A stretch of 64,000 nt of DNA, from NCBI GenBank assembly GCA_964057225.1, contig OZ059896.1, forward strand, positions 15,128,001 through 15,192,000, read 5' to 3'. Numbering within the stretch: position 1 is the first letter of the stretch; every line of letters begins with the position of its first letter. The stretch comes from Auanema rhodensis. Its lineage: Eukaryota; Animalia; Nematoda. Shown here one piece after another: positions 1 to 28,915 of the stretch. A model generated the notes under the pieces. The model searched no databases. It was not told the origin of the DNA and saw nothing but the letters and a program-made list of their open reading frames with translations. The translations under genes and the position numbers were made by a program.

Positions 1-38
1 TCTACAGTCCTCCGCTCTACCAACTGAGCTATCGACGG
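1..38 (-). tRNA. tRNA-Tyr(GUA), 5' part only (cut by window edge)
   Basis: Reverse complement reads CCGTCGATAGCTCAGTTGGTAGAGCGGAGGACTGTAGA. Confidence 0.85.
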
Positions 39-77
39 AACGAATCTGTTGTTTTCAGAGGTTATTGTCAATAACTG

Positions 78-126
78 ATATCTACACTTCTACAATCCTC
101 CGCTCTACCAACTGAGCTATCGACGG
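78..126 (-). pseudogene. tRNA-Tyr 5' half plus intron; 3' exon and terminator deleted; C32>T
   Basis: CCGTCG...GGATTGTAGAAGTGTAGATAT joins directly to spacer CAGTTATTGAC. Confidence 0.9.
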
Positions 127-205
127 AACGAAGCTGTTGTTTTCAGAGGTTATTGTCAATAACTGCTATAATCAATATTTTAAATGGAACAAAAAGAAAA
201 GAAAC

Positions 206-288
206 TCCGTCGAGCCGGATTCGAACCAGCGACCTAAGGATATCTACACTTCTACAGTCCTCCGCTCTACCAACTGAGCTATCGACGG
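206..288 (-). tRNA. tRNA-Tyr(GUA) with 10-nt intron
   Basis: A box TAGCTCAGTTGG, anticodon GTA, intron AAGTGTAGAT after G37, B box GGTTCGAATCC, T-rich terminator. Confidence 0.97.
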
Positions 289-367
289 AACGAATCTGTT
301 GTTTTCAGAGGTTATTGTCAATAACTGCTATAATCCATATTTTAAATGGAACAAAAAGAAAAGAAAC

Positions 368-450
368 TCCGTCGAGCCGGATTCGAACCAGCGACCTAAG
401 GATATCTACACTTCTACAGTCTTCCGCTCTACCAACTGAGCTATCGACGG
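368..450 (-). tRNA. tRNA-Tyr(GUA) with 10-nt intron, anticodon-stem variant
   Basis: Same as the other copies except GAGGA>GAAGA, which gives an A29-C41 mismatch. Confidence 0.9.
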
Positions 451-529
451 AACGAATCTGTTGTTTTCAGAGGTTATTGTCAATAACTGCTATAATCAAT
501 ATTTTAAATGGAAGAAAAAGAAAAGAAAC

Positions 530-612
530 TCCGTCGAGCCGGATTCGAACCAGCGACCTAAGGATATCTACACTTCTACAGTCCTCCGCTCTACCAACTG
601 AGCTATCGACGG
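530..612 (-). tRNA. tRNA-Tyr(GUA) with 10-nt intron
   Basis: Identical to 206-288. Confidence 0.97.
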
Positions 613-651
613 AACGAATCTGTTGTTTTCAGAGGTTATTGTCAATAACTG

Positions 652-700
652 ATATCTACACTTCTACAATCCTCCGCTCTACCAACTGAGCTATCGACGG
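652..700 (-). pseudogene. tRNA-Tyr 5' half plus intron; 3' exon and terminator deleted; C32>T
   Basis: Identical to 78-126, with the same deletion junction and the same substitution. Confidence 0.9.
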
Positions 701-779
701 AACGAAGCTGTTGTTTTCAGAGGTTATTGTCAATAACTGCTATAATCAATATTTTAAACGGAAGAAAAAGAAAAGAAAC

Positions 780-802
780 TCCGTCGAGCCGGATTCGAAC
801 CA
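780..802 (-). pseudogene. tRNA-Tyr 3' fragment (B box plus 3' acceptor strand) at the array edge
   Basis: TGGTTCGAATCCGGCTCGACGGA; homology stops abruptly after 802. Confidence 0.88.
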
Positions 803-1108
803 CAGACCCAAACAAGATAGCGATTTATAAAACTTGAATTTCTAGCATGAACGATTTTGGAAGCTGCGGAAGAAAATGACCAACCTGTTGAATTTAGTTC
901 ACTTGATCATAATAGTCGCATGTTATGATTGTAATTGTTTTGTATACAACTAGTAATAGAAAATCTATTTATAAACAATTAATTATTATTCATCATGATG
1001 TGAATTAAGAACACTAGGTTTCTAATAGAATCACAAGGAAATATTCAAGAATACAACTGAAACAGCCTGATTGTGTTTTAGCAGTTAAGATTAATATTAT
1101 ATTATACA

Positions 1109-2947
1109 TTAAAGAGCTGTCCGCATGCCAGCGTGGGGCAGTCCGATTTCGACATAGAATTCGTCCATTATAGAGGTGTAGATTTTCTGAATATATCGAT
1201 GAATACGGTACCGCTCAGACTCAGATACCTCATTGATTTTAGCCAAATACGCCGCAAGACCTTCAATATAGTATATTCTGTGTATGATCTTCATTAGTTG
1301 AAGTGTAGGAAAGTGTATGAAATGTTCATAAGTATTTTTCAAACTGAAGTCTCTTGTAGAATTAGGAATAATCTTTAAGAATGTTAAACGATCGGAAATA
1401 GAACCCATAGATCGAAACTAACCGTGTTTGGTACTTTCATGGGAGTAACATAATGAGTAAAATCACTTAAGCAATATTCAGAAATTAAATATAATACGTG
1501 AACGAGCTTACATTGTAACTGTGTCTGTATCATCGAAATTCAAGTAACTTACAGTGAAATATTCATTCGTGAGTGCTAAGATATCTTGAGTGAATTCGTG
1601 AAGATTATTCTCCAGCTCAGTTACACTACTCGAGGATCGAGAAATGTGAATGATTTGTTTTGTGATCAATATTTTCACATCTAGTAGGATATGCATACGT
1701 TTGTCAAGGATTTCAACAAGGTTTTCAGTAAAACGTTTCATATACTGAAAATATTATCAGATATTACTCAAATTTCAAAGCTTACATTTTCAATATATTT
1801 ACCACCATTAAATGCTTGACCGGTAGTAGGATCACTTTCTAAATCTCAAAATAAATATTTTGTAAGCTAAAAAATATAAAATTACCTGAACATAATATTG
1901 TTTTATCTAGAGTGACAACTGGAAGGACTTCGCTAAAACATGTGTTACAGTCCATACCTTGCCCATCTACGAATAAAATACGCTAGATAGGTGGAAAGAC
2001 ATTACCTTCCAATGTATTTTGAGTAAATGATACATTTGTAAATTCTGAATTAATTCGAGAAAATGATGATTCGGAGACAGTAGATAACTCGGCAACAAGC
2101 TCCTCCGTATTTTGTTTATTATGATTATTTCTACCCGGAGACAATTGAGAACCAGACAAAGAGACAAGACTTGAACGACGCATCGCATTCTTATCCATTC
2201 TATTTCGGCATTTTTGCAATGTTTTGTATACTTCATCTAAAAGATCTAAATATAAAAGTCAATATCAGATTAATATATCAAACTGTTGGTATCAACAACA
2301 AGTATTTCGACAGGAGAAGTTGCGGATTGAAAAAATAATGCTTCTTTTGGTATTGATTCTATCATAGTAACGACAGCTGTCGCTGAAGCAGCTGTTTTCA
2401 TGCTCCCCTTCTCTTTGGAATCATTATTGATACCTTCTTCAAATCCAAAATTAAAGTAGTATTACACAATTCATGAAGTACTTTTGTTTATATCATTAAA
2501 TTGATCAAAAAAATCCAATTTCCCTTCAAATTCGCAACGGTATTTGAAGCTGAAATCATTATTCGAACTTTTGCACTAAAACTAACTTAGTGATATTGAA
2601 GTCAACGATATCAAGTTTATTATAAATGAGAATAATATCTTCAACAGCTATCTCTGCTTCAGCCAATCTGGATAACATTTTCTTCCTGAAACTGAATAAA
2701 AACGTGAACTTTCATGCTAAGAAGAAATGTCTACTGCGATGATAAATTTGTAGCTGTACGGACTGAATCGATTTCATCAACATATTTCTGCCAAATACTT
2801 ATACCTTTAACTGATGTTTCACCTCTTTGCAAGCAGCTAAAAACAAATACTAAGATTGTTTAATAGCAAAAATAAATAAGCTAACTCCTTCACATATATC
2901 CACATACGACTTTCTTCCTCTAAGGTGAACTTATTTCGATAAGACAT
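1109..2947 (-). CDS. Multi-exon protein (about 400 aa) with an N-terminal Rap1/TEBP(DTN)-type Myb/homeodomain-like domain
   Basis: Spliced N-terminus: MSYRNKFTLEEESRMWIYVKD|CLQRGETSVKGISIWQKYVDEIDSVRTATNLSSH|FRKKML. This fits the Rap1-Myb pattern FTxEE...W...KG..IW......RT...L..HFRK. Downstream exons join in phase through track ORFs 1983-2219, 1508-1741 and 1109-1408. The gene is well supported; the family call is an inference. Confidence 0.65.
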
Positions 2948-3865
2948 GAAACAGCCTACCAAATTAGTAAACATGGAAAAGATTTGTAATTGTTTTAAAA
3001 AATGCACAACTATATAACAAGAAAATACACAACAACTGAACATTGCAAACTTTACGGGTAAGACAACAATGAAAAATTAAGCGTCAACATAAAAATACAG
3101 ATTTTATTAGCATATTCAAAATATCGAATACCACGAATTTCAAGCATCCTTCGATCCAACTGGGAGCGGAACATTGCTCGACTAGCTAGATCGAACGGGA
3201 TTGTGTACTCTCACCGTGATATGGTTGTAAACGAATACCTTCTTTTGTCACTGGAATTTGTACAAAGTTCAACCGTTCATTTCAGTTTGTTATTGAGAAA
3301 TGACGTCATTTCACGTAGAATATTCTTCTATAATATTCATCGAGAGGCATATCGGGAAGCTTCCAATGCCTCATCATCGCAACTTTGGATCTGTAACCTC
3401 AATCCAGCTTTGGTTCATCTGGTGTTCGGTTCTCCACCTTATTTCCTCCTTATTTCTTACTGATTCTATGTAAGTCGAATACTCACCCCCTTCTTCGATA
3501 ATGCAAGATTCTATCCCACCTCCTAGAAAATACTGCGCTGACCTTTCAGGCCAACCTGCTCCACATCATCTGGCGTCCGATCTAGTAGTCTGAAATAATG
3601 ACTTGATATTATTTAATTCCGGGTTTTATAATGAAAACAAGGCGAAAATTACAAAGAGAAGAAAGAAAAAAATATCTGCTTTGTTCTTGAAGCATTTCAA
3701 ATACTTGAAATGCACTAATTTTGAACGATGACAGCCTCTCGTTTAAAAAGTTAAGGATTTTGACTTGCTGCCTAGCCTAAAGGGAGATCAGAGGAATGAA
3801 ATATAATATATGTTTCAAGCACCTCTGTGTTTTGAATCTTTTCTCACTTATTAACTAAAAGAATT

Positions 3866-4397
3866 ATGAATTGCAAATCGTTTGAATTGAACAGCAAAGA
3901 GACGTTAGTTTTCAGTTTTGTTCATATTACCTTTTCTTCATTTTAATATTGGCCCTTTTTTTAATAATTTGTGCCTGCTATTTCAGACGGGAGTCTCATT
4001 TATGGAGGAATAATTCTCAAAACAATCTCACAAAAGAAGATGTAATAGTAAAATCTTCAACCGTAGGTGAAGAAAAGAATACTAAAGTACAAATGAAACT
4101 TTAATGATTTATATGCTTTTATGTTATATGTTTATGCTTATAGGTGATTCACTTTTTGGAATTAGCTCTTGAAACTTGTGGAATTGAAAATGAAATAGCA
4201 ACTTTCATCAAACGAAATTGTGATGAAGCATTTGGTATTCACTTAGTTTGTTCAATTTTTCTTGAATGTTTCAATACCTTTCAGGAATGAATTGGCAAGT
4301 TATTGTTGGAAGAAATTTCGGATCTCATTTAGATTGTATAGAATATATACATTTAACTATATCTAAAATATCAGTATTGATTTTTCGCTGTATGTGA
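3866..4397 (+). CDS. Divergent dynein light chain (LC8 family), 4 exons
   Basis: MNCKSFELNSKET|RESHLWRNN...KNTK|VIHFLELALETCGIENEIATFIKRNCDEAF|GMNWQVIVGRNFGSHLDCIEYIHLTISKISVLIFRCM*. Contains an LC8-type W..IVGRNFGS motif. Missed by the ORF track. Confidence 0.9.
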
Positions 4398-6118
4398 AGT
4401 TAATCTTTTCAACATACTAATGCTGCTTCAAGAGGTCTTCATTTCAATATATATAATTCAGAAAAATAATTACGATGTATTAAGTATTGGTTTTTTTTGA
4501 TCATTTCGATATCTTCACATCTGGTATCTAGACTGTCTGTTGTATTCTATCCGATCCATCTTTAACTCCAGGAATGTTCTCTAGTTTAACCAGCGAGGTG
4601 CTTGCTTTGGCTCCACAAGGGCGTGGGTTCATCCATTTTCCTTATGGCTTCGCATATCACCTGAGAATGCTTTAGTTATTTTGTTTACATGTCTGTAGGA
4701 TACTTAACAGGCCCAAGCAGGTATTGTATTAACTACAAACACACTACGCATTTAAGTGATTATTAGAAGACTGAAAATTTTCTTTTTTAATTTTCTTCGG
4801 CTATGAAAGGGAATAAATATAAAATATAAACATATTGCATACATGCTAAAAGTTTAACCTATTTTACCTTAGTTTTTCAGGCCCCATTCTTGTATATTGT
4901 TGATCAATTCATAAACTTGAAAATTGCTCTGTTAAGATAATTAGTTTTATTGAGCGTTCTCGAAAAATCCGTCGTTTTTCCACATTTCAGTAGATTTTAC
5001 TGGCTATTTTCATCTTTTTTTGTGATGTCATTATGAGCTGTCCAATGAAAACTTAAAAACCAATAACAAATGCTCTCAATTATTAGTTAAAGAAAAAAAT
5101 TCTTTTTCCCTCCAGTTTATATAAATTTTTAAAAATTTCTTTTTGATTTATTATTTTGTTTTACATAACTGTTAATGATGACATAATGAATGTAAATTAA
5201 CTTTTAATATTATTGACTTCACTAGACTAATTCTTCAGATTGTTCTTTAGACTTCGTTCTTTCCCATCAAACTAAATTCAATTGTTATTTTTTCTCTTTA
5301 TACTCTTTTAGATCACTTATTTTCTATTCAAAATGTACAAGTGGAGAAAAAGACAGAGTGAAATGAAATAGACAACTCAAAAGAATACAAAGATGAGACA
5401 TTGCTTGCTGCTTCTAACTACTGGCAACAAAAAAACAGAAAAGAAGTTAAAGCCTAACAGCTACTTCTCGATATTAAAAAAGGTTTTAAAGCATTTCTTT
5501 CCTTTCAATCCAGAACGTTTGGAATTACTTGTTCGTCACTGATTGCTCATTTTCGAGTTTTAAAACCAATGTATTTCAACTCTATTTCTGTTGGCAAGAG
5601 GAATGATATTTTCTGCTTGAAAATTCAAGTATTTTCTACGTCGTTTTCTTCTTCTTCCCGTAATTTTCTGGGTTTTCAACTGCAATTCCTTTGCGGTTTC
5701 TCTCAAATAGATAGCTCGATGAAATGATGTTAACGTCCGTCAAATGCTCTGTCTGTTAAGGAGCTTGGAACTGCATGTGTGATCTGCAGCTAAATCCATG
5801 CTGCAGTTCCTTCGCATTCAGCTATTTTGTGATTTACATTTAACATTTCATCCACTCTCGTCTTTACTCTACTGTAGATAATATATATATATTTTTTTTT
5901 TGAATATGAATTGAACAACATATAGCATGTAATATGATAATACACAATCTTACTTTTCCGAATTTAATGTGTTCTTCCTTATTAACATATTACTGTTTAT
6001 CCATAAAACATTATCAGTCTAATCCAATTTATCATTTTACACTTCAAGCTACTAACTAGTTAAGTAACAAAATGCATGTCCTTACAAAGAAGGGCATCAG
6101 CCTAAGTCCTCATCGCCG

Positions 6119-6335
<217 letters not shown>

Positions 6336-8166
6336 TTTTTTTTTATCTTTGTCGTCTCCTCTGCTACTCTTCCTGTTTCTCCTCTCTCGGTCGTTTGCAG
6401 TCTATCTATCTCTATCTCTATCTCTATCCCTCTCTATACTAGTGTTACTGCTAAGGCTGCCGCAACTACTGCTCCTCCCATCTCATCACTTCAACCTCCT
6501 TTCGTTGCCTTCTGCCCTCCTCCAATCTGCTCACTTTTCCAGAAATCTAACCTTTCCTTCTGCCATTCGTTCAATACGAATGTTTCACATATCATCTCAT
6601 CCTATCTTTCACTTCATTCGTCTTTCTTTCTTATTACTTCATCGATATTTACGACGCTGGGATGCCGAGACAAGATATGAAAACGGGGCAGAAGTTTTAC
6701 GTGAATGGCATCTCATAATCATTTTGATTTCGCTGAACGTTGAAACCGGTTGCTTCTCTATTCCATCGTTCTTTCTTCGCTTATACTTTCCACAAACTTT
6801 TTTTCGTATGTATATCACTTATACTCTATTGTTTCTTATTTATCACAGATTCCTTATGCTGTCTCTTGATTTGCTTCATGACCCCGCCCGCTATATTCTG
6901 ACATCCCTTCTCATATTCTTTATTCTCGCTCGAACTTCTAGTTTTATATCCCATTTCTCACTGGATTCTTCCGTCTTGTTAGTAATGTTCCTATGGCATT
7001 CCATGTACGGCGGACGAATGAGTGCAGTCATTCATCATGATTTGTATGCTTCAAAAATAGAATGAAAGAATGCTAATATATTGATTGTTTCTTCTTTCTC
7101 TTTACTTTAGAAGTAAAAGTTTCTGTATTTTCGTCTCGATATTTTCTCATTGAACTCTTATAAGGCATTTCTCGCTTTTTCTTTCCTTTTCTTCTCCTCT
7201 CTTTTCTCTATCTTTTTAAATTTTATTTCTGTAACTTCTCTCTTTATGCCTCCTTATATTCGTCTTTTTTCCAAAAAAGCTGTTTCTGATGTAGAAAATA
7301 AGTATTTACAAGTTTCTTCCGTTGGAAATTCTCTCTGTATGAAAACAAGGTCAACCAAAAATACATGATTGATGTGAAATGATGGAATAGTGTCATGGTT
7401 GTTACCGAGTTTTTTGGATATTTTTAAAAGAGGAAAAGTAATGAAACCAGAAATAAAATTTGAAAGAATCTCTGATAATCCTTAAACGAAAATATCTTGA
7501 TAATTTTTCACTTTTTCTTCAATAGTTATTGATTTCTTGATGATGATGACTTCTATTTCATCTGGTTATATTAGAACAATGAACAGAGCTGCTACGAATG
7601 AATGAAAGTCTTTGGAAAAAACAGAGCGAAAGAGAGAGAGACCGAGAAAGAGAGAGAGACTGAGAGAAAGAAAGAGAGAGAGAAACAGACCTATGCAAAG
7701 CTTGGCAATGAAAGAAGAACTTTCCCTAATGGAAACATACAAAAGTATTTTCAACTATCAAACAGCTTTTGCAAAGCACATCTACCAAATAAGAAAAAAG
7801 TACTTAACTCTCTTCTGGAGGTTCCAAAAGCTTCATATGTACATATCGATTTCCCCTCCTTTTTAAAAAGTCTACTATTCAGTTTTTCTTACTTTCGTTC
7901 ATCTCCAATGCTATTCTCAACTTATGTGCCACACCAGAGCTTCTCTGACGTTCCCTCTCTATTCCATTCCTCCCCAAACCCTCTCTATCTTCATTCGTTC
8001 CACTCTCAACTATCTTCTTCTTCTGCATCTTCAGCTTTCCCGAGTTCAGACATAAACATGAAATGAGTGTATGTATGTGTGTGAGCCTCATCCATAAGCA
8101 TGCGTAGCAATAGGATTTGGTTTATTCGCCATTCATGCTTTTTTTATTTTTCTCTCTGCTTTGAAA

Positions 8167-8171
<5 letters not shown>

Positions 8172-8231
<60 letters not shown>
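8172..8231. repeat. Compound (TA)n(TG)n microsatellite
   Basis: Directly visible in the sequence. Confidence 0.95.
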
Positions 8232-8232
<1 letters not shown>

Positions 8233-10547
8233 AGTTGGATAGCTGGATAGACGAATATGATAGAGAAATCAAGCGAATCATGAATATTCTACATGCGTAC
8301 CCCCAGAGAAAGAAAGAGAAATATTGGAACAGAAGGTAAAATTCAAAGAAAGGGGATATACTCTAAAGTCAAAGAGTAGGCAGATTCCTACAAAGATAAA
8401 ACCAAGAAAAAAAGAGTTACAAGAAAAAGAGAAAGAGAGAAAGATAAGGGGGAGAGATTGAACGAAGAAGAGATAGAGAGAGATTTTGTCATCATGTATC
8501 AATTTCACCAACAAATGTTCGAATTTTCATCTTGTAATATTGATTGCTATGTTCCCATCGTTTATCATATTAACAATAGAGTATTATTATTCGTAAAATT
8601 GCCAAGGAAACAACCTGTTTCCTGTCCTTGCCCCCACCCTCTAATGAGATTTCTCTTTTCTGTCTCACATACATACATTCAACTGCCCTGGTCCTCCTTT
8701 CTCCATTTATTGTTGTTCTTTTCGATCACTCTATCTATTGTCTCTGTATTTAGCCTAAACAAGCCAGATAGCATGACAATATGTGAGAGTAAGTATCTAG
8801 CATGCAAGACAGCAGATGTACGTTGTCAAGTAACGGCACCAAAAGCAGAGTAAGCCTGTTAATGCTCGAAACCCTACCACGAACATTTCCTTTTATTCAT
8901 TTTCATCGTTTTCTCTTCACCGATCTTAATTGCCTCTTTCAGTTGTTTAAATGTTTTTCGTTATAGGAAAATCTGCTCTTTTATATATAAAGTTGTATAT
9001 GTGCGTATATGATCAAGCTATTTCTATGTCTTCACTTACAATTCAAATATTCGTTATTCACGACCTCATATCGATCTGCTTTGCTCAGCTCCCGCTGATA
9101 ATTTATGGTTTACTTATGACTCTCCAGATGTATTTATAACACCAATTCTATTGACCCAAAAAAAAAACGTTTCAGATAACTTTTCCTCAGAAAATGATTT
9201 CTCGCTCTGCTCTTCACTCTTTTACTTTTCTTTCTTTCCAATTCTCTTCACACCTTTGCACTCTCTCCTCTCCTTGTTCTCTCGCACCGTCTCTGTGTTT
9301 CTGTTATTTTTCTCTTCTCTCTCGTTTTATACATAGCAACTCATGTGTTCCAACTTTTGCTTCATTCTCACCCTGTTTCTCTACATAGCGCATTTATTCT
9401 TCAAAATTCTGTTTTAGAATCTATTTTTCGTAAACTTAATCAAGCATATTCGAACAGGCTCTTTAGCCCCCTCAATTGCCTCCTGAGCATTTTATTCAAA
9501 ATTTCCATATTAATTTAATTGTTTTTCTATTTTTTCTTTTGATTTGCGATATAAAGTGACATCTTTTTCCATTTTTCCCTTACTTTTTGACCTTGTATTC
9601 TTATAATTGTATCTTTGATTTCTCCCGATATGAGATACAATAGACATGAGGGAAGAGGGTATCGAGTTTGACAATGGCAGTTCCGCTCATCAATTTTTCC
9701 AACAGAAAATCTTTACACCTTTTTTTCTCTTTTTTTCATAGCCTAATTCATATATATATATATGACATTAAAAAAATTTAAAAGTTTTTCATATAAGATC
9801 AACAGAAAACTCTCTGGGCTTTTGATGTAATTTTTGATAAAACTCTACCATATAATGATATATTTCTGTTTTGATCTACTATACTTCGCTCTAGATCAGC
9901 CGGAACTTATACCTTCTATTTACATCCCATTATTTACAATCATTAATCTTGAATACATACATAGTTAGTAGAAATAAATATATTGGCTTAAATCCAACTT
10001 TTATTATAAATATATTTATTTTCCGATCAAATCGATTAACTTATATTTTTCTTCCTTTCTCTTTCTTTTACCCTCCATCATCTCTCTCTCTCTCTCAATT
10101 TTTGTTTTTCTGCTCCCAATCTTTAGCAGGAGTTTTCGCCATCTAGCCGTCGCCCAAAATTTTAACATTGTCCGCTTCAACTTTGGCCATTCACTTTCCT
10201 TTCTTGACATAAAAAAGTTACTTCGACAATCTCAAAACAAAACAAAGTCAATATAGAGTTTGGCATGTCAGTCAGTTACTGTTTGCGTTATATTTCTCTT
10301 CGCAAGTAAATACTTTTGTGAAATTCTGTTTGGGAAAAACATAGTCCCGTCGTCTCTTCTCCTTTTCCCATTTATTGTGCTTTCTAGCGAATTTTTTTTT
10401 GTTCATGTTAGTCCTTTGCGTGAGAATTGGTGAAAAATTTTCCACACATTTGTCCTAACACACCTTGGTATTCTCTTGTTTGAAACATTTTTTGCTTTTT
10501 ATTTCTGCTATTACCATCTTAGATATATTAATTATTTTCTAGAAAAC

Positions 10548-11260
10548 ATGAGGTTACTTGTTGTATCTGCTGTCATCTTATCTATTATTGTCAGTACTAC
10601 TGCTTTGAAATGCTATACGTGTAACTCGTTAACTAATAAAAATTGTCTGGATAAGTATGAAAAGTTAATTGTGGTAAGAATTTGTTTTAGTTTTGTTTTT
10701 GATTCTACGGCCTAGTTTTAGTAAATAATATGAATATATTCCAGAAATGCGTTCCACGTAAATTTGGTGGATCAACTACATCTGTTGCTCCCACTGGATG
10801 CCGAAAAATAACTCAATACGCTAATGGTAATTAATTTTTCTTTATAATTCTGGATTTTATTTTCGAAAATCTTACGAATTTTTTTGTTTTTTGTTGTGTT
10901 GTTAAACTTCTATGTCTTTGCGTGTTTTTTTTTGAAAATCCCAATATCACATACACATATTGTAGGAGAATCATCTGTCATCAGAGAGTGTGCTTATCTC
11001 GGAGAAGCAGAAGATAAATCACAAAAGGTCAGCCTTGTTTTTGCATCTTTCTTCTTCCTCTAAATCTATTGCTTTTCTTTTTTATTTTCATTTTTGTTTG
11101 AGTATATGCTTAGAATATCCTCTACATATTTCCGTTTTAGGGATCGTTGGGAGTTAGCAGAACTTATCATCAATGTACATCAGATCTTTGCAATTCTGCT
11201 GTATCTTACAACATTTTATTAGTTCCAGCTTTTATCATGGTTATATACAATATGTTATGA
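10548..11260 (+). CDS. Ly6/uPAR (three-finger, quiver-like) secreted, probably GPI-anchored protein, 4 exons
   Basis: Signal peptide MRLLVVSAVILSIIVSTTA, then LKCYTCNS...C...|KC...GCRKITQ|...VIRECAY...|...QCTSDLCNS and a hydrophobic tail. Confidence 0.92.
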
Positions 11261-11791
11261 TTCTGAAAAACAAAAATCTCTTTAATTTCGATTCTTTATT
11301 TTTAAATTTAGAAAATATTCGATAATAGGTAAATTGTTTTTTTTCAGAGCTTTTTTGTTTAGTTTTCTGTATGCTATATACATATATTATGAATTAGAAT
11401 ACAATTTTTATATACTAAACTACTGATAAGACATTTTGAAAATTAAGCAAAAAATGCCTAAAACAAAATATTAATTAGTCGTTTACGTGCATTTCAAGTA
11501 TTTTTGGCTCTCTCGCGCTTCAATATATTGATTAACCTTTGTAGGTGGTTAAAATAATAAATTGTCTTATAATAGCATTTTCTTTGTGAAATAATTTTCA
11601 ACAAACTTAGTTCAAACATAATATTTTAATTAAAACTTGAAAAAATGATAAATTATGTACATTGGTGCCTATTAACTGAATATAGTTGTCTTGGAAGTTC
11701 TTATAAATTCTATTTTGGTGTACGAAAAAAGATACAAAAAGTAAAATGTATTAGTACAATCAGAAGGAGATAGGAAGAAAGACAAAAAATG

Positions 11792-12580
11792 CTATAATTC
11801 TGTTGCAAACGGTTTCTTTTTTCCGCAACAGACGCAATAACGTAAAATTGTATAGATCAAAATTATAACACATGATAACAGGACACAGATGATAGCGAAG
11901 CTGAAAAGATCATTAATATTTTGAAAAATAATTAGACGGCTCATCCAAAACTTACAGGAGCCATATGCGAACATATGCACAGCATTTATTTCTTTCAGTT
12001 ATATCTACATCACAACATTGATAATAGAAGAACATTGATTCCCTCGGACATCTAAAAACAATGTGTTGAATTTCAATTGTCATCATTTTAAAAAATCAGC
12101 GTATAGGACTGGTTAAACTTTAATTTCTTCCAATTATTCTCAAAAAAATGTAATGCTATATTATTGTGTTCTGCTCAATTTAAAAAAATCGGACGAGGTT
12201 AACTCACAGAACATTAGGACTGAAAGGTTCGAGTGGTTCCTTACAATAGCTAACAGATCCCTTTGTATTTCCTTGTAAGCTATTGATTATGGCAGCAGCT
12301 ACGGAGGCTATTAACTAAATATTAAATTGTTTCAATACATGTTATTACCTATTGAACACAAACCAGAAAAGTAACAACTGCACTCAATAAGCGTAGAGTT
12401 GATGGCAGCACACAGAGAGTGTCAGGTTCGTCAATCATGAACTAGAAAAATAAAATGTTTATAACGAACACAATTGCTTACCTGTCCTGGCAAAACTCTA
12501 GTACCACTACGGACTGACCTCAAAGACGGATGCCTAGACCATACAACAACAGGAGATTCAGTTTCTATTACTTTTGACAT
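11792..12580 (-). CDS. Small two-TM protein with a Cys-rich loop (nematode CX/Shisa-like), 5 exons
   Basis: MSKVIETESP...PGQ|FMIDEPD...VVTFL|LIASVAAAIINS...YCKEPLEPFSPNVL|CPRESMFFYYQCCDVDITERNKCCAYVRIWLL|FAIICVLLSCVIILIYTILRYCVCCGKKKPFATEL*. All introns are GT-AG and in phase. Confidence 0.82.
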
Positions 12581-12774
12581 TCTTGTCTCCTATAAATCAA
12601 CCAAGTACTTAAAATATAGCTGTTAAAGAAAAAGAGATAGAAAAACTGTGAAGACCGAAATAATATCATACAATTACGATATTCAAGATTTATAGAAAGT
12701 TGTTCAGCAGAACCAGTTGTATAATCTTCGGAAAACAGTTATTGACAATAGCCTTAGAAAATATCAGATTCGTT

Positions 12775-12857
12775 CCGTCGATAGCTCAGTTGGTAGAGCG
12801 GAGGACTGTAGAAGTGTAGATATCCTTAGGTCGCTGGTTCGAATCCGGCTCGACGGA
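12775..12857 (+). tRNA. tRNA-Tyr(GUA), 10-nt intron, copy 1
   Basis: CCGTCGATAGCTCAGTTGGTAGAGCGGAGGACTGTAG[AAGTGTAGAT]ATCCTTAGGTCGCTGGTTCGAATCCGGCTCGACGGA, followed by a T5 terminator. Confidence 0.97.
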
Positions 12858-12933
12858 GTTCTTTTTCTTTTCTTTCTTACCGATTCAGTTGTAGCAGTTA
12901 TTCACAATCGTCTGAGAAGAACAGGGTTTCGTT

Positions 12934-13016
12934 CCGTCGATAGCTCAGTTGGTAGAGCGGAGGACTGTAGAAGTGTAGATATCCTTAGGTCGCTGGTTCG
13001 AATCCGGCTCGACGGA
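12934..13016 (+). tRNA. tRNA-Tyr(GUA), copy 2
   Basis: Identical to copy 1. Confidence 0.97.
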
Positions 13017-13092
13017 GTTCTTTTTCTTTTCTTTCTTACCAATTCAGTTGTAGCAGTTATTCACAATCGTCTGAGAAGAACAGGGTTTCGTT

Positions 13093-13175
13093 CCGTCGAT
13101 AGCTCAGTTGGTAGAGCGGAGGACTGTAGAAGTGTAGATATCCTTAGGTCGCTGGTTCGAATCCGGCTCGACGGA
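13093..13175 (+). tRNA. tRNA-Tyr(GUA), copy 3
   Basis: Identical to copy 1. Confidence 0.97.
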
Positions 13176-13251
13176 GTTCTTTTTCTTTTCTTTCTTACCA
13201 ATTCAGTTGTAGCAGTTATTCACAATCGTCTGAGAAGAACAGGGTTTCGTT

Positions 13252-13334
13252 CCGTCGATAGCTCAGTTGGTAGAGCGGAGGACTGTAGAAGTGTAGATAT
13301 CCTTAGGTCGCTGGTTCGAATCCGGCTCGACGGA
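13252..13334 (+). tRNA. tRNA-Tyr(GUA), copy 4
   Basis: Identical to copy 1. Confidence 0.97.
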
Positions 13335-13410
13335 GTTCTTTTTCTTTTCTTTCTTACCAATTCAGTTGTAGCAGTTATTCACATTCGTCTGAGAAGAACA
13401 GGGTTTCGTT

Positions 13411-13493
13411 CCGTCGATAGCTCAGTTGGTAGAGCGGAGGACTGTAGAAGTGTAGATATCCTTAGGTCGCTGGTTCGAATCCGGCTCGACGGA
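13411..13493 (+). tRNA. tRNA-Tyr(GUA), copy 5
   Basis: Identical to copy 1. Confidence 0.97.
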
Positions 13494-13569
13494 GTTCTTT
13501 TTCTTTTCTTTCTTACCAATTCAGTTGTAGCAGTTATTCACAATCGTCTGAGAAGAACAGGGTTTCGTT

Positions 13570-13652
13570 CCGTCGATAGCTCAGTTGGTAGAGCGGAGGA
13601 CTGTAGAAGTGTAGATATCCTTAGGTCGCTGGTTCGAATCCGGCTCGACGGA
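13570..13652 (+). tRNA. tRNA-Tyr(GUA), copy 6
   Basis: Identical to copy 1. Confidence 0.97.
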
Positions 13653-13728
13653 GTTCTTTTTCTTTTCTTTCTTACCAATTCAGTTGTAGCAGTTATTCAC
13701 AATCGTCTGAGAAGAACAGGGTTTCGTT

Positions 13729-13811
13729 CCGTCGATAGCTCAGTTGGTAGAGCGGAGGACTGTAGAAGTGTAGATATCCTTAGGTCGCTGGTTCGAATCC
13801 GGCTCGACGGA
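13729..13811 (+). tRNA. tRNA-Tyr(GUA), copy 7
   Basis: Identical to copy 1. Confidence 0.97.
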
Positions 13812-13887
13812 GTTCTTTTTCTTTTCTTTCTTACCAATTCAGTTGTAGCAGTTATTCACAATCGTCTGAGAAGAACAGGGTTTCGTT

Positions 13888-13970
13888 CCGTCGATAGCTC
13901 AGTTGGTAGAGCGGAGGACTGTAGAAGTGTAGATATCCTTAGGTCGCTGGTTCGAATCCGGCTCGACGGA
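13888..13970 (+). tRNA. tRNA-Tyr(GUA), copy 8
   Basis: Identical to copy 1. Confidence 0.97.
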
Positions 13971-14046
13971 GTTCTTTTTCTTTTCTTTCTTACCAATTCA
14001 GTTGTAGCAGTTATTCACAATCGTCTGAGAAGAACAGGGTTTCGTT

Positions 14047-14129
14047 CCGTCGATAGCTCAGTTGGTAGAGCGGAGGACTGTAGAAGTGTAGATATCCTTA
14101 GGTCGCTGGTTCGAATCCGGCTCGACGGA
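14047..14129 (+). tRNA. tRNA-Tyr(GUA), copy 9
   Basis: Identical to copy 1. Confidence 0.97.
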
Positions 14130-14205
14130 GTTCTTTTTCTTTTCTTTCTTACCAATTCAGTTGTAGCAGTTATTCACAATCGTCTGAGAAGAACAGGGTT
14201 TCGTT

Positions 14206-14288
14206 CCGTCGATAGCTCAGTTGGTAGAGCGGAGGACTGTAGAAGTGTAGATATCCTTAGGTCGCTGGTTCGAATCCGGCTCGACGGA
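14206..14288 (+). tRNA. tRNA-Tyr(GUA), copy 10
   Basis: Identical to copy 1. Confidence 0.97.
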
Positions 14289-14364
14289 GTTCTTTTTCTT
14301 TTCTTTCTTACCGATTCAGTTGTAGCAGTTATTCACAATCGTCTGAGAAGAACAGGGTTTCGTT

Positions 14365-14447
14365 CCGTCGATAGCTCAGTTGGTAGAGCGGAGGACTGTA
14401 GAAGTGTAGATATCCTTAGGTCGCTGGTTCGAATCCGGCTCGACGGA
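14365..14447 (+). tRNA. tRNA-Tyr(GUA), copy 11
   Basis: Identical to copy 1. Confidence 0.97.
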
Positions 14448-15731
14448 GTTCTTTTTCTTTTCTTTCTTACCGATTCAGTTGCAGTTATTGACAGCTACAT
14501 CTGCTCAAGACAAGGTTTTGTTTCGTTGAACGTTGGTTGGTGGATCCGAGTTTTTTTCGTTCTGTACAATTTTTTAATCAAAGAATAACAGACAAATTTT
14601 AAAAAAGCTGACAACATTTTTTAAACAAAAAAAATCGAAAAATCGAAGTAGCGAACAAGAAAATCTTTATAGCTTAGTTTAAAGAACTGGCAATGCAGCC
14701 GGATGGTATTCTTGAATAGAATAAATTGTGATTGCATGTTTGAATGATTCAAGAGTAATTAGGCAAAAGATAGAATTTATGTTCTTTCTCAAAAAACCGG
14801 AAGATATACTGTTTCAGTCTTTCTTTTTTAATGAAGACATTTGTTGGATATTTCAGTAGAGTGAAGAAAATTATCCGCAATTAATCAAAATTAACTTCCT
14901 AAAAGTTAAAGAATATTGAAACGGAATATGATATGAAAGAGTAAAAAGAGAATAAAGTATATCCGTCTGAATAATTTAATAGAAGAAAGTTGTTTAGCAA
15001 TGCTTTATCTGAAACGCTACAACTTATGACTTTATTTGGAAAAGTCATAAAATGAGACGAAAAGCAAGCGAAGTATATCATTTCAAATCTCATGAGAATT
15101 AAATTTGAGCTCGTAAGCATGTAAAAATCGAAACTCTAGAGATGAAATTGGTTTAACAAAAAAACTTAAAGATCAAACTAAATTTGAACAGAAAAAATGA
15201 TAAAAATAGTCTCAAACAAAAAAATATGAGCGTAAATGTGTAAAAGAACAACCGTTCCCAATATTATGTTAAAATAATTTACAATGTCATAATGTCATCA
15301 CGTTAATTTACGTGAAATTAGCATACAACATTACAAGAACAACACGTAGTACGAAAGAAAATTAAATCTGGTCTGATGAGAGTGATGATATGACAGAAGC
15401 ATTGAAAGCTATTTTACTCCGTAAAGCAATAAAACTAATACATTCAAAAGAATATAACAACTGAGAAGAGTACATTTTATGCCTCTTGAACCTTATATTG
15501 TTATTCGTCTAAAGCGTTGTGAACATAAAACTCAAATTCAAAAAGAAATCGAAACAGATGCTGCAACTACTGTTGACGGAGTTGACGTAACTTTGAAATA
15601 ACGTTAAAAATATATCATCTGACTTTGAAGTATGCCGACCTATGTTATTAAAGAATATAGTTTTTACTGAAAATTATTTATATTTTATTTCAAATTTACA
15701 TATGAGCATAGCGTATGACAAAGTTTGGTTT

Positions 15732-17139
<1,408 letters not shown>

Positions 17140-18460
17140 TCTGAAAATAAAAAAAAACTTTAAAGTGTAGAGATGAAAATTTCATAGATGCTTCTGAGAA
17201 TGACGAAAGAAGAGTTTAGATAGAGTTTTGAGAGAAAGAGGAGAGAGAATGAGAACTTTTATTGTTATAATAGTGGATATAGAGCATGTATAGCATCTAC
17301 TTCTTATGAACTATTTAAATGACAAACTATGTTATCTAATCAATTCTTTATCGATCTAACCGGTACATTTTCTTTTTTGAATTCTCTTTATTGTTTTGAT
17401 TTGATATGAATGGTACAGATTGATAAGATCTTTACGCATTTTTTGATGAAAGAAATCTGTTTATGTTTATCTTAAGAAATAGAAAAAACATTTGACAATT
17501 TCAATAGAAAGAAGAAGATTTAAAAGCTATAGTAAATTTATTTTTATATTTTATTTATAAAAATTGATACATATTTATTAAATAAATGTTTATTGAAATA
17601 AAAACTAAAAATGAAAACAGTAAAACAATAAAATAATATTAATAAAATATAATATATGAATGTATTTATGACGACGATGAAACAATTTAAATAATTCTTT
17701 TTTTTGTTATATGATATAATATAATAATATTAATAATAATATGTATAAGTATGTATAATACTATCTTCCCAAATAATATTAATTATAATTTCAAAAAGTT
17801 GAAAACCGGATAAAAACAGGATGTCTAATGGAATATAATTGAAATACTTGTTACGATTATCATCATAACATGGGCAATGTAGAAATACTACATAGATTGT
17901 AAGATTCCAGCTTAGTTTTTAATGATTTTTGTATTTTAACAGGGACAACAATAAAAGGTCGAAAAGTATTGGGAGAGAGGAAGCGTAGTGGGGGAGAAGA
18001 TTGAGCAAGATAGAGAGAGGGAGAGAATAACGAATATTTAACCGGATTTCTACAGAAATGTTTAGGAGTTAATACCTTATTTATACAAATATAATGTAAT
18101 CTACACGTAATATGAAAGATAAGAGTTGAATGTAGATATGTTATGTATTTGGAGACGAAGATGAAGACTTCGGAGTCTTCTTGGCTTGTGAAGATGGTTG
18201 TGCTTTATCATATATTTCCATGAGCTCTATTCCGATTCCAAAAAAAAGGAAAATTAAGAAAAATAAAAGATGTTTCTCAAAGCGAAAAAATTTGGAATTG
18301 TAGACAGAGGACATCTAGAAGCTGGGATGAAAGTACTGGCCATTAAGAGGTGGGTTACTGACCTCATCTAGCATTAATACAAGATATATAATCTAGAGAT
18401 ACACGTAAAAAATATAAAAATGTTAGATATAAAGGAGTTTTAGTTTATCTACTTTTCTGA

Positions 18461-21400
18461 TCACATGCCAACTAAACGGAACGAGACACTCTCAGAAGCT
18501 GGATGCTCTACCGTATATTTAACCACAAGATCTTTTTGCTGTCCGGCTGCCAAAACCATTGACCATTCCAGGTTGTGATCTCTATTCAAACGAGCTTCTG
18601 TTCCCTTTGTACGAATATCAGGTGATACAATTGAAATCTAAAAGAGTTTCTATTAAGAACGCTTAGATCTCGTCTGTTTCACCTTAATCTTTTCATCAGC
18701 AGATTTTGGAATTTGCTCTTTCATTGTTATCTGAACAGCTTGAGCAACTTTAGCATTTCTTAGTGTGATACACTGTTCATGAGTCACCACAGTGCTTTTT
18801 GATATTAATCCAACCTATAGAATATGTTTTCATTAAGTTTGTAAAGCTTTTTAACTACTTGTTCATGATATGAAATAGGTGGCTTGTATTCAACCTTGAT
18901 TGAGGGATCCATGCCTAGAGCACATCTAAATTCTTCACCTGGAGCAACAGCACGAAGATGTGTCTAAAACAAACAATATAACAATCATCAATGTATTTAA
19001 CATACTTTTGATACAAAACTATTATTCAAATAAATTGATGCAGGCCCAGGAAGAATGGGATATGTTGAGGTGTTAGTAATCGAAGCCGAAAGGAATGCTG
19101 AGCAACAACGGGATGGAACAGTTTCATGGAAAAATGCTGAGGCAAGGTCCACCATGGCCACAAGGACTTTCTGTTCATGACCATTATATGGAATTGAAAC
19201 GGTTCTTGGAATTGAGAAACAAGTAGACATAACGTTCTCGATGCTCTGAAAACGTTTTGTCCAATTATGTTTTTCGGGAAAATCAACAAATATACTCACC
19301 GGTGTTGATGTGCTGTCTTCGCTGCTTCGACTCATCTGACCATTGTTGTAACGATGCATAGCAGCAGCATCGACAATTTCATTGAAATCGAAAGATCCAA
19401 ATCCCATATCTTCTTCAGAAGCAGCTGACATTGGCTTACGACGAGCAGCAGATGCATGACGAGTTCGGCTGCAGAACAAGCAATATAAGGTGTTAATTCA
19501 ACAATGAGAAACTCACTATCGGCTTGAGCGATGAAGACTAGCGGTAAGAGTAGCTAAGGCAGGAGCTGATCCTCCAACAGAAGGAGAAGCAGTTGACAGC
19601 ACCAATTCCGTGTCTTTCCAATCATCTCCTGTATTTTGTTCTACTAATCCATAATAACAAAGCTGAAATAGGACATATAAACATGATACTATAAGTCTTT
19701 CAGAGTGTGAAGTTTATCAATTGTGTGGAACTTACTTTAACTGACTGTTCGCCCTCACTAGTAGTAGAAGCTCTAATATCATAAGTAGGTTTCCAACTAG
19801 CGCAGTATACCTAAAATAACAAATTTTTTAAGTTTTTGAACTTTATTTGTATATTAAGCATAGTATCTAAAGTTTTTACACAATATTTCCTGTTTCCCCC
19901 TCCCACTTATACATAAAAAGAGCGACTTTGATCGCTTATTCGATCGGTACTTCGACCAAGTTTTATGTTATCTCGTTTGTTTTTTTTTGAAGAAGAGGAA
20001 TTTTTCAGTTTAATTCGATTACATCATTTTCTAACTTACAATATTTTTATAAAGTCAATAACGAAAATAAAAACAAATATGATTACCTGATAACTTAAGT
20101 ATAATTCAACTGGTCCAGCAAAATCCATTTCAACGATAATGCTGATATTTCTAAAAAATTAAAAAATATTCAAAAACTTTATTTAAGAAGTTTTCAGAGA
20201 TTATTTTTAAAAAGTTCAGCTATGTTATTCATGCTCATAATGATAGATCAAGAAGATATTTCCATATCAATACTTGCGAAAGCATGAAATTACCATGTTT
20301 TACTTCGAAGATCAGTTTTATTTTGAAAAAACAAATATTCATGTAAATATCCAGTTACAGCAGCTTTTAAAATAAAAAACTATGGTCCTGATGGACCAGC
20401 AGCATAGATGAAACTGGATGAAGCCATAATTGGATGATCCCAACCTTTTTTTTAGAAGGTTAAAAAGGTGCGCTTATCAAGTTCGCGGACAACTATATAA
20501 ATCCCAGGAAATCAGCAAATGACATCCAACTTTTCCATCCATTTCATTTCAGCTTTTACATTCTTTTCTTCAAACTTCACACTAATTATTTTAAAAACTT
20601 CTTCAGAATGTCTGACGAGAAAAATTTTGAAAACACCGCCTCTGTTAAGCGCTTCGCTTTCTTTGGAGTAGCTGTCTCTACTATTGCTACTTTGACTGCT
20701 ATCATTGCTATTCCAATGCTCTGCCTTTACATGCAGAACATCCAATCTGGACTCCAAGATGAGCTCAACTTCTGCAAAACTCGCACTGAATCTCTCCGTG
20801 GAGAATACACCAAGGTTTCATTTGCACAGCTTTTCTTTATAGCAATTCTGTATTTCAGCTCTCTAGCTACCGTGATGCTGCTGTCGCTTCCCGCAAGAAG
20901 CGTTCTTCCGATAATCAATGCTGTTCTTGCGGAGTTGGACCAGCTGGAGCAATTGGAGCTCCAGGAGAACCAGGCCAAGACGGAAAGGATGGACGTCCAG
21001 GACAGCCAGGAGTTCCAGGGCCTGACGCTGACACCGCCGATGCTCTTCCAAAGCCAGAAGACTTCTGCTTCGATTGCCCAGCAGGACCACCAGGACCACC
21101 AGGAGCTCCAGGACCAAAGGGATCTGACGGACAAACTGGTGCCCCAGGAGAAGATGGACCAGCTGGACGTCAAGGACCACGTGGGCCACCAGGACAACAA
21201 GGACCAGTTGGACAAACCGGAGCTGATGGACAGCCAGGACAACCAGGATCTGCCGGACAAGTCCGCACTCTTCCATCCCCACCAGGAGAGCCAGGACAAC
21301 CAGGAGAGCCAGGACCACAAGGACAACCAGGAACTGATGGACGCCCAGGACATCCAGGACGCGCCGGGCCAATTGGACCTACTGGAGATGCTGGAGCTGA

Positions 21401-26200: not shown

Positions 26201-26841
26201 GAAACCATTTTGTGCTTTATTTTCACCTTTTGTGAACATTTAGAAATAATCTGTTGACTCTGTACTGAAACAAATTGTTCAACAACATCAGATCACCATC
26301 TTAAATCATTAAAAACCTAGGTAAGAGAGCTATCTTCCACTGGTCAAATAACCCAACAAACATTGATCCTTAGCCCCTATCGCTACCAACTAACACGACA
26401 CTCTGGTTCTTGTTTCCTCTTGTCCTCGAGTATGACACTACGATTTTTGATCAGAATACAGCCGATAATTCATAATCTTCCCAGTCTCTAATGGAAAGTT
26501 TAGCAGAAAGCTTTGTAAAGAAACGAAAATGCAGTGCCAGCTCGTGCCAGCGGTCATTTCTTAAGATAAGAAAATTTCTGATCCATCAGCACATCAGCTC
26601 CAAATACTAAACATGGGAGGGCCACTTTATCACAAAGTGGCATTTAAATAGCTGAAGACAAACAGTTGGCTTAATCACCATGTTCACTGTAATATGCCTA
26701 GACGATTGAGTTCTTTGAAATTCTATATTGATATGATAACTTAAAAATGCAGTGTGAAAATAATTTAATTAAGATAAGAGATAACAGTTAAACCGGTTCA
26801 GAATACAGTATGAACTTCTCAGGCTATTCACTGCGCCCATA

Positions 26842-28810: not shown

Positions 28811-28915
28811 TAAATACTTTTTAGCCGAATTGTTTTTTTTTTGTTAAAAGGTCCAATGCTAAATATACATTTTTTTTTGGTTCATAGTTGTTGTATGTGA
28901 ATACTCTACTCGAAG

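What the first reader, a model, noticed from the sequence alone, without database searches (positions are those of the whole stretch)
1..14447. Two oppositely oriented tRNA-Tyr tandem arrays bracket a 12-kb gene island
Seen: the same intron-containing tRNA-Tyr(GUA) gene is tandemly amplified twice, transcribed away from the island on both sides. There are at least 14 full-length copies. The spacers are homologous but array-specific. Known: clustered tRNA genes and TFIIIC sites act as chromatin barriers in yeast and mammals; tRNA arrays have been proposed to have a structural role in Entamoeba; several rhabditids carry out programmed DNA elimination of repeats. Inference: the arrays may be structural elements (domain boundaries, recombination or inversion substrates, or germline-restricted repeats) rather than only tRNA dosage. 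This is the best candidate for an undescribed system in the window.
Basis: partly seen in the sequence, partly recalled or inferred. Interest (0 to 1): 0.8.

Follow-up and report, generated by a model that had tools for sequence, protein, structure and literature searches.

The report
Inverted tRNA-Tyr gene arrays, nematode
Two oppositely oriented tandem arrays of an intact, intron-containing tyrosine tRNA gene really do flank 12 kb of nematode DNA, but they look like one local case of a genome-wide habit of amplifying tRNA genes into satellite-like arrays, not a special paired device.

Summary
Eleven identical tRNA-Tyr(GUA) genes lie on the + strand (12775-14447, 159-bp unit). On the - strand (1-808) there are three full copies, two half copies, one 3' relic and one copy cut by the window start.

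All copies point away from the 12-kb interval. Spacers are about 82% alike between the arrays and 97-100% alike within each.

New points:
- The left array is a 574-bp higher-order repeat that runs off the window.
- Its spacer type has a word depth 10-90 times single copy per variant contig, and about 1,000-2,000 times when summed. It is therefore the edge of a very large tRNA-Tyr family, not a small twin of the right array.
- Its inner edge cuts through a tRNA gene, which suggests a rearrangement breakpoint.
- The right array has older, left-like flanks.
- The interval holds a spliced orphan transcript and a Ly6/QVR-like gene.

Unchecked notes from this scan report arrays of many other isotypes elsewhere in the same genome.

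I found no hybrid units, no telomere repeats and no array next to the orthologous genes of two distant relatives. A boundary, inversion or elimination role is untested and unsupported.

Verdict: a new member of a known kind (tandem tRNA gene arrays).

The parts
1..808 (-). Left tRNA-Tyr array. It is a 574-bp higher-order repeat (one half copy plus three full copies), runs off the window start, and its inner edge is at about 808.
   Evidence: Window 1-228 matches 575-802 at 226/228, and similarity ends at about 808.
1..38 (-). 5' part of a further tRNA-Tyr copy, cut by the window start.
   Evidence: Exact match of the 5' half at 2-38.
77..126 (-). Half tRNA: the 5' 50 nt including the intron, with C32T. 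There is no B box and no T-run before the next gene.
206..288 (-). Full tRNA-Tyr(GUA) gene.
368..450 (-). Full tRNA-Tyr gene with G29A, an A-C mismatch in the anticodon stem.
   Evidence: Rfam 56 bits against 61 for the others; the difference was located.
530..612 (-). Full tRNA-Tyr(GUA) gene.
651..700 (-). Half tRNA, second copy, in higher-order register with 77-126.
779..808 (-). 3' 30-nt relic of a tRNA-Tyr gene. The array edge cuts through a gene here, so this is a candidate rearrangement breakpoint.
   Evidence: Single-copy contigs in three DNA runs start at 773 and run on into the interval.
1014..2836 (-). Spliced transcript of 8 exons with 7 GT..AG introns of 41-50 nt. It holds two in-frame ORFs (about 125 and 215 aa) split by a stop, and has no known family.
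   Evidence: 1507-nt RNA contig with joints; translation; no significant Pfam hit (none reaches its curated cut-off) or homologue.
6119..6336 (.). (CT)n microsatellite of about 109 units in the non-coding middle of the interval.
   Evidence: Contigs break and depth drops there.
10548..10826 (+). First two predicted exons of a Ly6/uPAR (QVR-family-like) secreted protein gene.
   Evidence: Weak Pfam QVR hit, E 0.017, below the cut-off. Splice-aware reading gives MRLL...CYTCNS...C...C...GCRKI. RNA runs hold 30-48% of the words of 9000-12700.
12718..12774 (+). Diverged leader of the first right-hand unit. It is closer to the left-type spacer than to the right-type one.
   Evidence: Unit 12731-12876 is 92-94% complementary to left units, against 88% for inner right units.
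12775..14447 (+). Right tRNA-Tyr array: 11 identical 83-nt genes in a 159-bp unit. The 10 inner spacers vary at only 2 sites.
14448..14552 (+). Decayed twelfth unit: a diverged spacer plus a tRNA-like remnant ending in a T run.

Best explanation
These are ordinary RNA polymerase III tRNA-Tyr(GUA) genes that became the repeat unit of tandem arrays, through unequal crossing-over or replication slippage.

Each array is kept uniform by concerted evolution, so the spacers are array-specific while the gene bodies stay identical. The two arrays share an ancestor unit.

The left one is the visible edge of a very large, satellite-like tRNA-Tyr array family. The right one is a small block of 11 copies in the opposite orientation. 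It most likely arose by an old inversion with one break inside a tRNA gene of the array, or otherwise from a divergent gene pair.

The pair is a by-product of array dynamics in a genome that, according to this scan's unchecked notes, amplifies tRNA genes of many isotypes. It is not a dedicated device. The copies with intact promoters can supply tRNA-Tyr.

Shown: the anatomy, the intact gene signals, the homogeneity pattern, the high word depth and the left junction. Inferred: the amplification mechanism, the inversion, and that the copies are transcribed.
For: - Gene signals are intact: cloverleaf, A and B boxes, an intron at 37/38, and T5 runs within 15 nt after every copy. Rfam scores are 56-61 bits.
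- The homogeneity pattern fits concerted evolution. The right array's 10 inner spacers vary at 2 sites, and the G variant occurs only in the edge units 1, 10 and 11. Both flanks are older and diverged.
- The first right unit is 92-94% like left units, against 88% for inner ones, which points to common ancestry.
- Half copies that cannot work as genes are carried along in a 574-bp higher-order repeat that is 99% identical between copies. Amplification is therefore mechanical, not selected copy by copy.
- Variant contigs of the left-type spacer have word depths of 723-4438 against 47.7 for single copy in X1, and 522-1967 against 53.7 in X5. Summed depths for the 701-900 bin are 50391, 107982 and 18394.
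- The left junction is carried by single-copy contigs in three DNA runs.
- The left array's edge cuts a tRNA gene at about 808, as expected of a rearrangement break.
- Scan notes report arrays of Trp, Phe, Ala, His, Ile, Arg, Gly and Pro genes in the same genome (unchecked).
- There is no tRNA within 10 kb of the orthologous DUF4139 gene in Pristionchus fissidentatus or Haemonchus placei, so the arrays are lineage-specific.
Against: - Transcription of the array copies was not measured.
- The tool states that summed word depth is not a copy number, and high-depth units could lie in other arrays rather than directly left of the window.
- The inversion model predicts a matching 5' gene fragment at the right array's far end. 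Only a decayed remnant is there, which neither confirms nor refutes it.
- The right junction and the count of 11 copies were not checked against reads.
- The genome-wide pattern rests on unchecked notes.
Confidence: 0.7

Rival explanations
1. The two arrays are chromatin boundary or insulator elements. They load TFIIIC or condensin and isolate the 12-kb interval as its own domain.
For: tRNA genes act as barriers in yeasts and mammals (established knowledge). A human tRNA tandem repeat at 1q23.3 has been proposed as a boundary (PMC4041453). The arrays are divergent and flank expressed genes. Every full copy has intact A and B boxes and could bind TFIIIC.
Against: There is only this one case. 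The left array appears to be the edge of a far larger array, not a matched partner. The interval is not an obvious unit: it holds an orphan transcript, about 6 kb of non-coding low-complexity DNA and a Ly6-like gene. No chromatin data are available.
Confidence: 0.1
2. The inverted arrays are substrates for recurrent inversion of the interval, acting as a flip-flop, or for other ongoing recombination.
For: The arrays are inverted repeats 12 kb apart with 83-bp stretches of perfect identity in every unit. The left edge looks like a breakpoint.
Against: Neither array shows a switch from one spacer type to the other, which a recent crossover between them would leave. Outside the 83-bp gene the arms are only about 82% alike, with indels. 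The three DNA runs give the same left junction.
Confidence: 0.07
3. The arrays are germline-restricted repeats, or they mark break sites of programmed DNA elimination.
For: Some rhabditid nematodes eliminate satellite DNA (established knowledge). The left-type unit is a very high-copy repeat.
Against: The unit is very abundant in bulk DNA runs. The interval beside it has even single-copy depth in three runs. None of the listed loose ends is telomere-like. The window holds no TTAGGC runs. The interval's gene is expressed as spliced RNA.
Confidence: 0.05
4. The arrangement, or the copy numbers, are an assembly artefact.
For: Tandem arrays are often mis-assembled. The window starts inside the left array. 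Several of the DNA runs may be the source of this assembly.
Against: Contigs from three runs under three organism labels cover 773 onwards without a difference. The right array has ordered edge variants and diverged flanks, which collapse or artificial expansion would not produce.
Confidence: 0.05

Closest known systems
Arabidopsis thaliana chromosome 1 tRNA-Ser/Tyr/Tyr (SYY) tandem cluster (PMC2886086, PMC7544208, PMC12308677)
   Same: Intron-containing nuclear tRNA-Tyr genes with intact Pol III elements are amplified head to tail into a homogeneous array, in excess of the dispersed copies.
   Different: Each Arabidopsis unit holds three genes of two isotypes and there are 27 units. Here each 159-162-bp unit holds one gene, there are two inverted arrays, half-gene units are included, and depth suggests hundreds or more copies. 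The Arabidopsis cluster is silenced by DNA methylation; the state here is unknown.
Entamoeba tRNA gene arrays (PMC2652664)
   Same: In that genome most tRNA genes sit in tandem arrays, and a structural role has been proposed for them. By this scan's unchecked notes, this nematode also has arrays of many isotypes.
   Different: Entamoeba units carry up to 5 tRNA genes and short tandem repeats in the spacers. These spacers have no such repeats and the units hold a single gene. The organism here is an animal.
Human 1q23.3 tRNA variable-number tandem repeat (PMC4041453)
   Same: A tandemly repeated tRNA-bearing unit, variable in copy number and proposed as a boundary element.
   Different: The human unit is 7.3 kb, GC-rich and binds CTCF. 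Here the unit is 0.16 kb. Nematodes of this group lack CTCF (from my own knowledge, not tested).
Homogeneous tRNA gene clusters in eukaryotes in general (survey PMC2888827)
   Same: Same-isotype neighbours, mostly in parallel orientation, arising by local duplication.
   Different: Most surveyed clusters are small. In the Caenorhabditis species surveyed, tRNA genes are largely syntenic. They are dispersed rather than arrayed, as far as I know (not stated in the text I read).

Membership tests
Eukaryotic nuclear tRNA-Tyr(GUA) gene | Cloverleaf with anticodon GUA | tested here: met
   All cloverleaf pairs are standard in the 73-nt spliced form. Rfam tRNA scores 61 bits.
Eukaryotic nuclear tRNA-Tyr(GUA) gene | C1-G72 pair and A73 (tyrosine identity in eukaryotes) | tested here: met
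   The sequence reads CCGTCGA...TCGACGG-A. That these are the identity elements comes from established knowledge.
Eukaryotic nuclear tRNA-Tyr(GUA) gene | Short intron one base 3' of the anticodon (37/38) | tested here: met
   A 10-nt insert, AAGTGTAGAT, sits between G37 and A38.
Eukaryotic nuclear tRNA-Tyr(GUA) gene | Internal A and B boxes and a downstream T-run terminator | tested here: met
   TAGCTCAGTTGG and GGTTCGAATCC. A T5 run lies within 15 nt after each copy.
Eukaryotic nuclear tRNA-Tyr(GUA) gene | Transcribed and processed to mature tRNA | not tested
They share runs of more than 31 bases with human tRNA-Tyr (from my own knowledge), so I worked beside them.
Tandem tRNA gene array | Head-to-tail units, each with a tRNA gene, nearly identical within the array | tested here: met
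   There are 10.8 copies at 99% identity, 3.6 copies at 98%, and variant sites are listed.
Tandem tRNA gene array | Part of a genome-wide arrangement of tRNA genes in arrays (Entamoeba type) | not testable with these tools
   Only this window can be read. Scan notes report many other arrays but are unchecked.
Tandem tRNA gene array | Short tandem repeats inside the spacers (Entamoeba type) | tested here: not met
   The spacers are unique 76-79-nt sequences without internal repeats.
tDNA chromatin boundary (insulator) | TFIIIC occupancy and a chromatin or expression transition at the element | not testable with these tools
   There are no ChIP or Hi-C data. Only the potential TFIIIC sites (A and B boxes) are shown.
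Invertible segment between inverted repeats | Both orientations present, or hybrid repeat units left by crossover | tested here: inconclusive
   The assembled arrays hold no hybrid units. Short contigs cannot span an array.
Programmed DNA elimination site or eliminated satellite | Telomere addition at the edge | tested here: not met
   The window has no TTAGGC runs and no telomere-like loose ends are listed for 701-6700. Only the left side was laid.
Programmed DNA elimination site or eliminated satellite | Depth difference between germline and soma | not testable with these tools
   No tissue-resolved runs were available.

The most novel reading that the evidence does not exclude
In this clade V nematode, tRNA genes of most isotypes have been turned into satellite-like arrays of hundreds to thousands of copies. 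These arrays, the tRNA-Tyr pair included, serve as chromosome landmarks (TFIIIC or condensin loading sites, domain boundaries, or recombination hot spots) and shape genome architecture beyond supplying tRNA.
Probability: 0.1. Interest if true: 0.75.

Novelty: new member of a known kind. Interest (0 to 1): 0.4.

Why it matters
Tandem tRNA gene arrays are known from Entamoeba, Arabidopsis and human. From my own knowledge they also occur in Xenopus and zebrafish.

Seven full-text searches found no description for a nematode. In the well-studied Caenorhabditis species these genes number only dozens per isotype and, from my own knowledge, are dispersed.

A nematode in which tRNA-Tyr alone may reach about a thousand copies would be a tractable animal model. 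It could address how Pol III genes turn into satellites, whether arrayed copies are silenced as in Arabidopsis, and how tRNA supply is kept balanced.

This single locus adds a clear example of array splitting by rearrangement and of independent homogenisation. On present evidence it does not reveal a new kind of system.

Tried and rejected
- **Leu(tag) call.** ARAGORN's Leu(tag) label comes from its not modelling the intron.
- **Extending left of the window.** The exact 99-aa ORF is not on record. A homology search with the exon found nothing. The findings search does not accept places before 1.
- **Naming the organism.** Its own proteins are not in the protein collections. The best named relatives are Pristionchus fissidentatus (68-78%), Haemonchus (65%) and Oesophagostomum (79%), so it is a clade V nematode of unknown genus. 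A 325-aa look-alike ORF (P0008) proved to come from other organisms, with no DNA match to the window.
- **Interval as a transposon.** It has no terminal repeats and no other copy in the window.
- **Synteny.** The orthologous DUF4139 neighbourhoods of P. fissidentatus (beta-lactamase-like, proteasome alpha and DUF4139 genes in the same order) and H. placei have no tRNA within 10 kb. These relatives are distant, and the gene next to the array (PhyH-like) is not conserved there.
- **Literature.** Seven full-text searches found no paper on nematode tRNA arrays.
- **Pfam on interval ORFs.** The only relevant hit was a weak, below-threshold QVR match; the other hits were also weak and below their cut-offs.
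- **Reads on the tRNA genes.** I did not lay reads on the tRNA letters themselves. They share long exact runs with human tRNA-Tyr, so I used 701-6700 beside them.
Full report
**What is there**

ARAGORN finds 14 genes in the 64-kb window, all in the reported region. Three are on the - strand (205-613) and eleven on the + strand (12774-14448). Rfam's tRNA model scores them at 56-61 bits, and nothing else in the window reaches any Rfam threshold.

ARAGORN calls them Leu(tag) because it does not model introns. Exact matching shows one 83-nt sequence. Removing the 10-nt insert AAGTGTAGAT after G37 gives a 73-nt RNA. In it every cloverleaf pair is standard, and it has anticodon GUA, a C1-G72 pair and A73. 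The A box is TAGCTCAGTTGG and the B box is GGTTCGAATCC. Each copy is followed within 15 nt by a T5 run.

**Right array**

Eleven identical genes sit at 12775+159*i. The ten inner 76-nt spacers differ at two sites only. One of these is a G found only in units 1, 10 and 11, the edge units.

The leader of the first unit (12718-12774) is diverged and resembles the left-type spacer more than the right-type one. Unit 12731-12876 is 92-94% complementary to left units, whereas inner units are 88%. After the last gene comes a diverged spacer and a decayed tRNA-like remnant (14448 to about 14552).

This is the usual picture of a homogenised core with older edges.

**Left array**

Read on the - strand from the interval outwards, it consists of:
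- a 30-nt 3' relic of a gene (808-779);
- a spacer;
- a 5' half gene (700-651, C32T, no B box);
- three full genes (612-530; 450-368, which carries G29A and so an A-C mismatch in the anticodon stem; 288-206);
- a second half gene (126-77);
- a further copy cut by the window start (38-1).

Window 1-228 matches 575-802 at 226 of 228 positions. The array is therefore a 574-bp higher-order repeat, and the similarity stops at about 808, inside a tRNA gene. The inner edge of the left array is thus a cut through a gene, as a rearrangement break would leave, not a natural end of an amplified unit.

**Relation of the two arrays**

The gene bodies are identical. The spacers align at 60 of 73 columns with 9 gap columns, and are 97-100% alike within each array. 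Two parts are shared by both spacer types and by both diverged flanks: a block about 26-39 nt upstream (CAGTTATT-G/C-ACA) and the last six bases before the gene (TTCGTT). I read these, by inference, as upstream promoter context under constraint.

**Reads**

To stay beside the tRNA letters, which share long exact runs with human tRNA-Tyr, I laid runs on 701-6700.

- Single-copy contigs start at 773 and continue into the interval in three DNA runs: 773-4328 in X1 and X5, and 773-1640 in X9. The left junction is therefore real in those data, although some runs may be the source of the assembly.
- Single-copy word depth is 47.7 (X1), 53.7 (X5) and about 12-17 (X9). Contigs of 59-60 nt that match the left-type trailer and spacer have depths of 723, 2783 and 4438 in X1, and 522, 1100 and 1967 in X5.
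- The summed depth of the 701-900 bin is 50391, 107982 and 18394. Only about half of that bin is repeat, while 60-nt unitigs overlap by 30 nt, and these two factors roughly cancel. The figures then point to the order of a thousand or more copies. The tool warns that this sum is not a copy number, so I take it as hundreds to a few thousand.
- Either the left array continues far beyond the window, or more arrays of the same type exist elsewhere.
- None of the listed loose ends looks telomeric.

**The interval**

An RNA contig of 1507 nt maps to 2836-1014 in eight pieces. The seven gaps of 41-50 nt read GT..AG on the - strand. It carries two ORFs in one frame, separated by a stop, and has no significant Pfam match or homologue. 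Its 3' end lies about 200 bp from the left array.

On the + strand, a signal peptide followed by CYTCNS...C...C...GCRKI over two predicted exons (10548-10673, 10745-10826) looks like a Ly6/QVR-family gene. The Pfam hit is below threshold. RNA runs hold 30-48% of the words of 9000-12700.

The middle of the interval holds a (CT)109 tract and other low-complexity DNA. The interval has no terminal repeats and no second copy in the window, so it is not a transposon.

**Surroundings and relatives**

To the right of the right array, all on the - strand, lie a PhyH-like gene (about 15-17.2 kb) and a DUF4139 gene (18.4-20 kb). A cuticle collagen gene follows, and further on a proteasome alpha subunit and a beta-lactamase-like gene.

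The best named relatives of the DUF4139 exon are Pristionchus fissidentatus (68%) and Haemonchus contortus (65%). The organism is therefore a clade V nematode whose own proteins are not in the collections. In P. fissidentatus the beta-lactamase-like, proteasome and DUF4139 genes keep the same order. Neither that locus nor the Haemonchus placei locus has any tRNA within 10 kb. The arrays are lineage-specific, although both relatives are distant.

**Context in the same genome**

Notes of this scan, all unchecked, report arrays of Trp (about 143 copies), Phe (64), Ala (75), His (81), Ile, Arg, Gly, Pro and Thr genes on other pieces of this genome. They also report a 33-kb cassette bounded by inverted arms that each hold a tRNA-Glu gene. 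The scan has thus met the same kind of thing repeatedly on other DNA of this genome. The 574-bp repeat was also noted on this window, and I confirmed it.

**Reading**

The most economical account is mechanical amplification of a working Pol III gene into tandem arrays, with each array homogenised on its own. Two facts argue that copies are not individually selected for dosage: dead half genes are carried along, and the depth is very high.

The opposite orientation, the cut gene at the left edge and the natural-looking old leader at the right array's inner edge fit an old inversion. That inversion would have taken the inner end of a large array, together with the adjacent 12 kb, and flipped them. 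The matching fragment expected at the right array's far end is too decayed to confirm this.

For the boundary, inversion-switch and elimination ideas I found no positive evidence. Some weak evidence points against them: no hybrid units, no telomere repeats, and the same junction in three runs. The decisive data, namely chromatin maps, long reads and germline versus soma depth, are out of reach here.

**Comparison with known cases**

Tandem tRNA arrays are well described in Entamoeba (PMC2652664), in Arabidopsis, whose SYY cluster also amplifies intron-containing tRNA-Tyr genes and is epigenetically silenced (PMC2886086, PMC7544208, PMC12308677), and in human 1q23.3 (PMC4041453). A survey of eukaryotes found homogeneous clusters in several lineages (PMC2888827). 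Caenorhabditis species carry hundreds of tRNA genes, with dozens per isotype (PMC13010820). Seven full-text searches found no report of such arrays in a nematode.

I file the locus as a new member of a known kind. Its interest is moderate and comes mainly from the genome-wide pattern it belongs to.

Noticed in passing
window 1-808: The half tRNA genes (5' 50 nt, C32T) are followed by 38 nt of leader and a full gene, with no T run in between. A transcript starting at a half gene could therefore read into the next gene. This was also noted by the scan (s1-379028). I confirmed the 574-bp repeat but did not test transcription.
   Followed up: partly
window 1014-2836 (- strand): The spliced 1507-nt RNA contig carries two ORFs (about 125 and 215 aa) in the same frame, separated by a single stop in exon 1886-2236. 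This could be a pseudogene, stop read-through, a two-gene transcript or a non-coding RNA. No homologues were found.
   Followed up: partly
window 5154-6607: In run X5 one contig, at depth 10.7 against about 46, skips 1452 bases that include the (CT)n tract. This may be a deletion allele or an assembly shortcut across the microsatellite.
   Followed up: no
window 4338-4340: A 77-nt contig in X1 and X5 carries A>G and A>T at depth equal to or above single copy. Loose ends and depth bumps occur at about 3100-3500, 3900-4100 and 4300-4500. Together these suggest short dispersed repeats inside the interval.
   Followed up: no
window 18400-31300 and L006: The order beta-lactamase-like gene, proteasome alpha subunit, DUF4139 gene is shared with Pristionchus fissidentatus (68% identity in the DUF4139 exon). 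In this window a cuticle collagen gene lies between the proteasome and DUF4139 genes.
   Followed up: partly
window 12717-14588 (+) and 153-689 (+): The 159-bp unit is a multiple of three, so the right array reads as a 623-aa open frame. Automatic gene callers could report it as a repetitive 'protein'.
   Followed up: no
L005 (Logan contig, 1078 bases): A short contig from another public run encodes a DUF4139 fragment 86% identical to the window's. It is the closest relative seen, and a candidate for a synteny test of the arrays.
   Followed up: no
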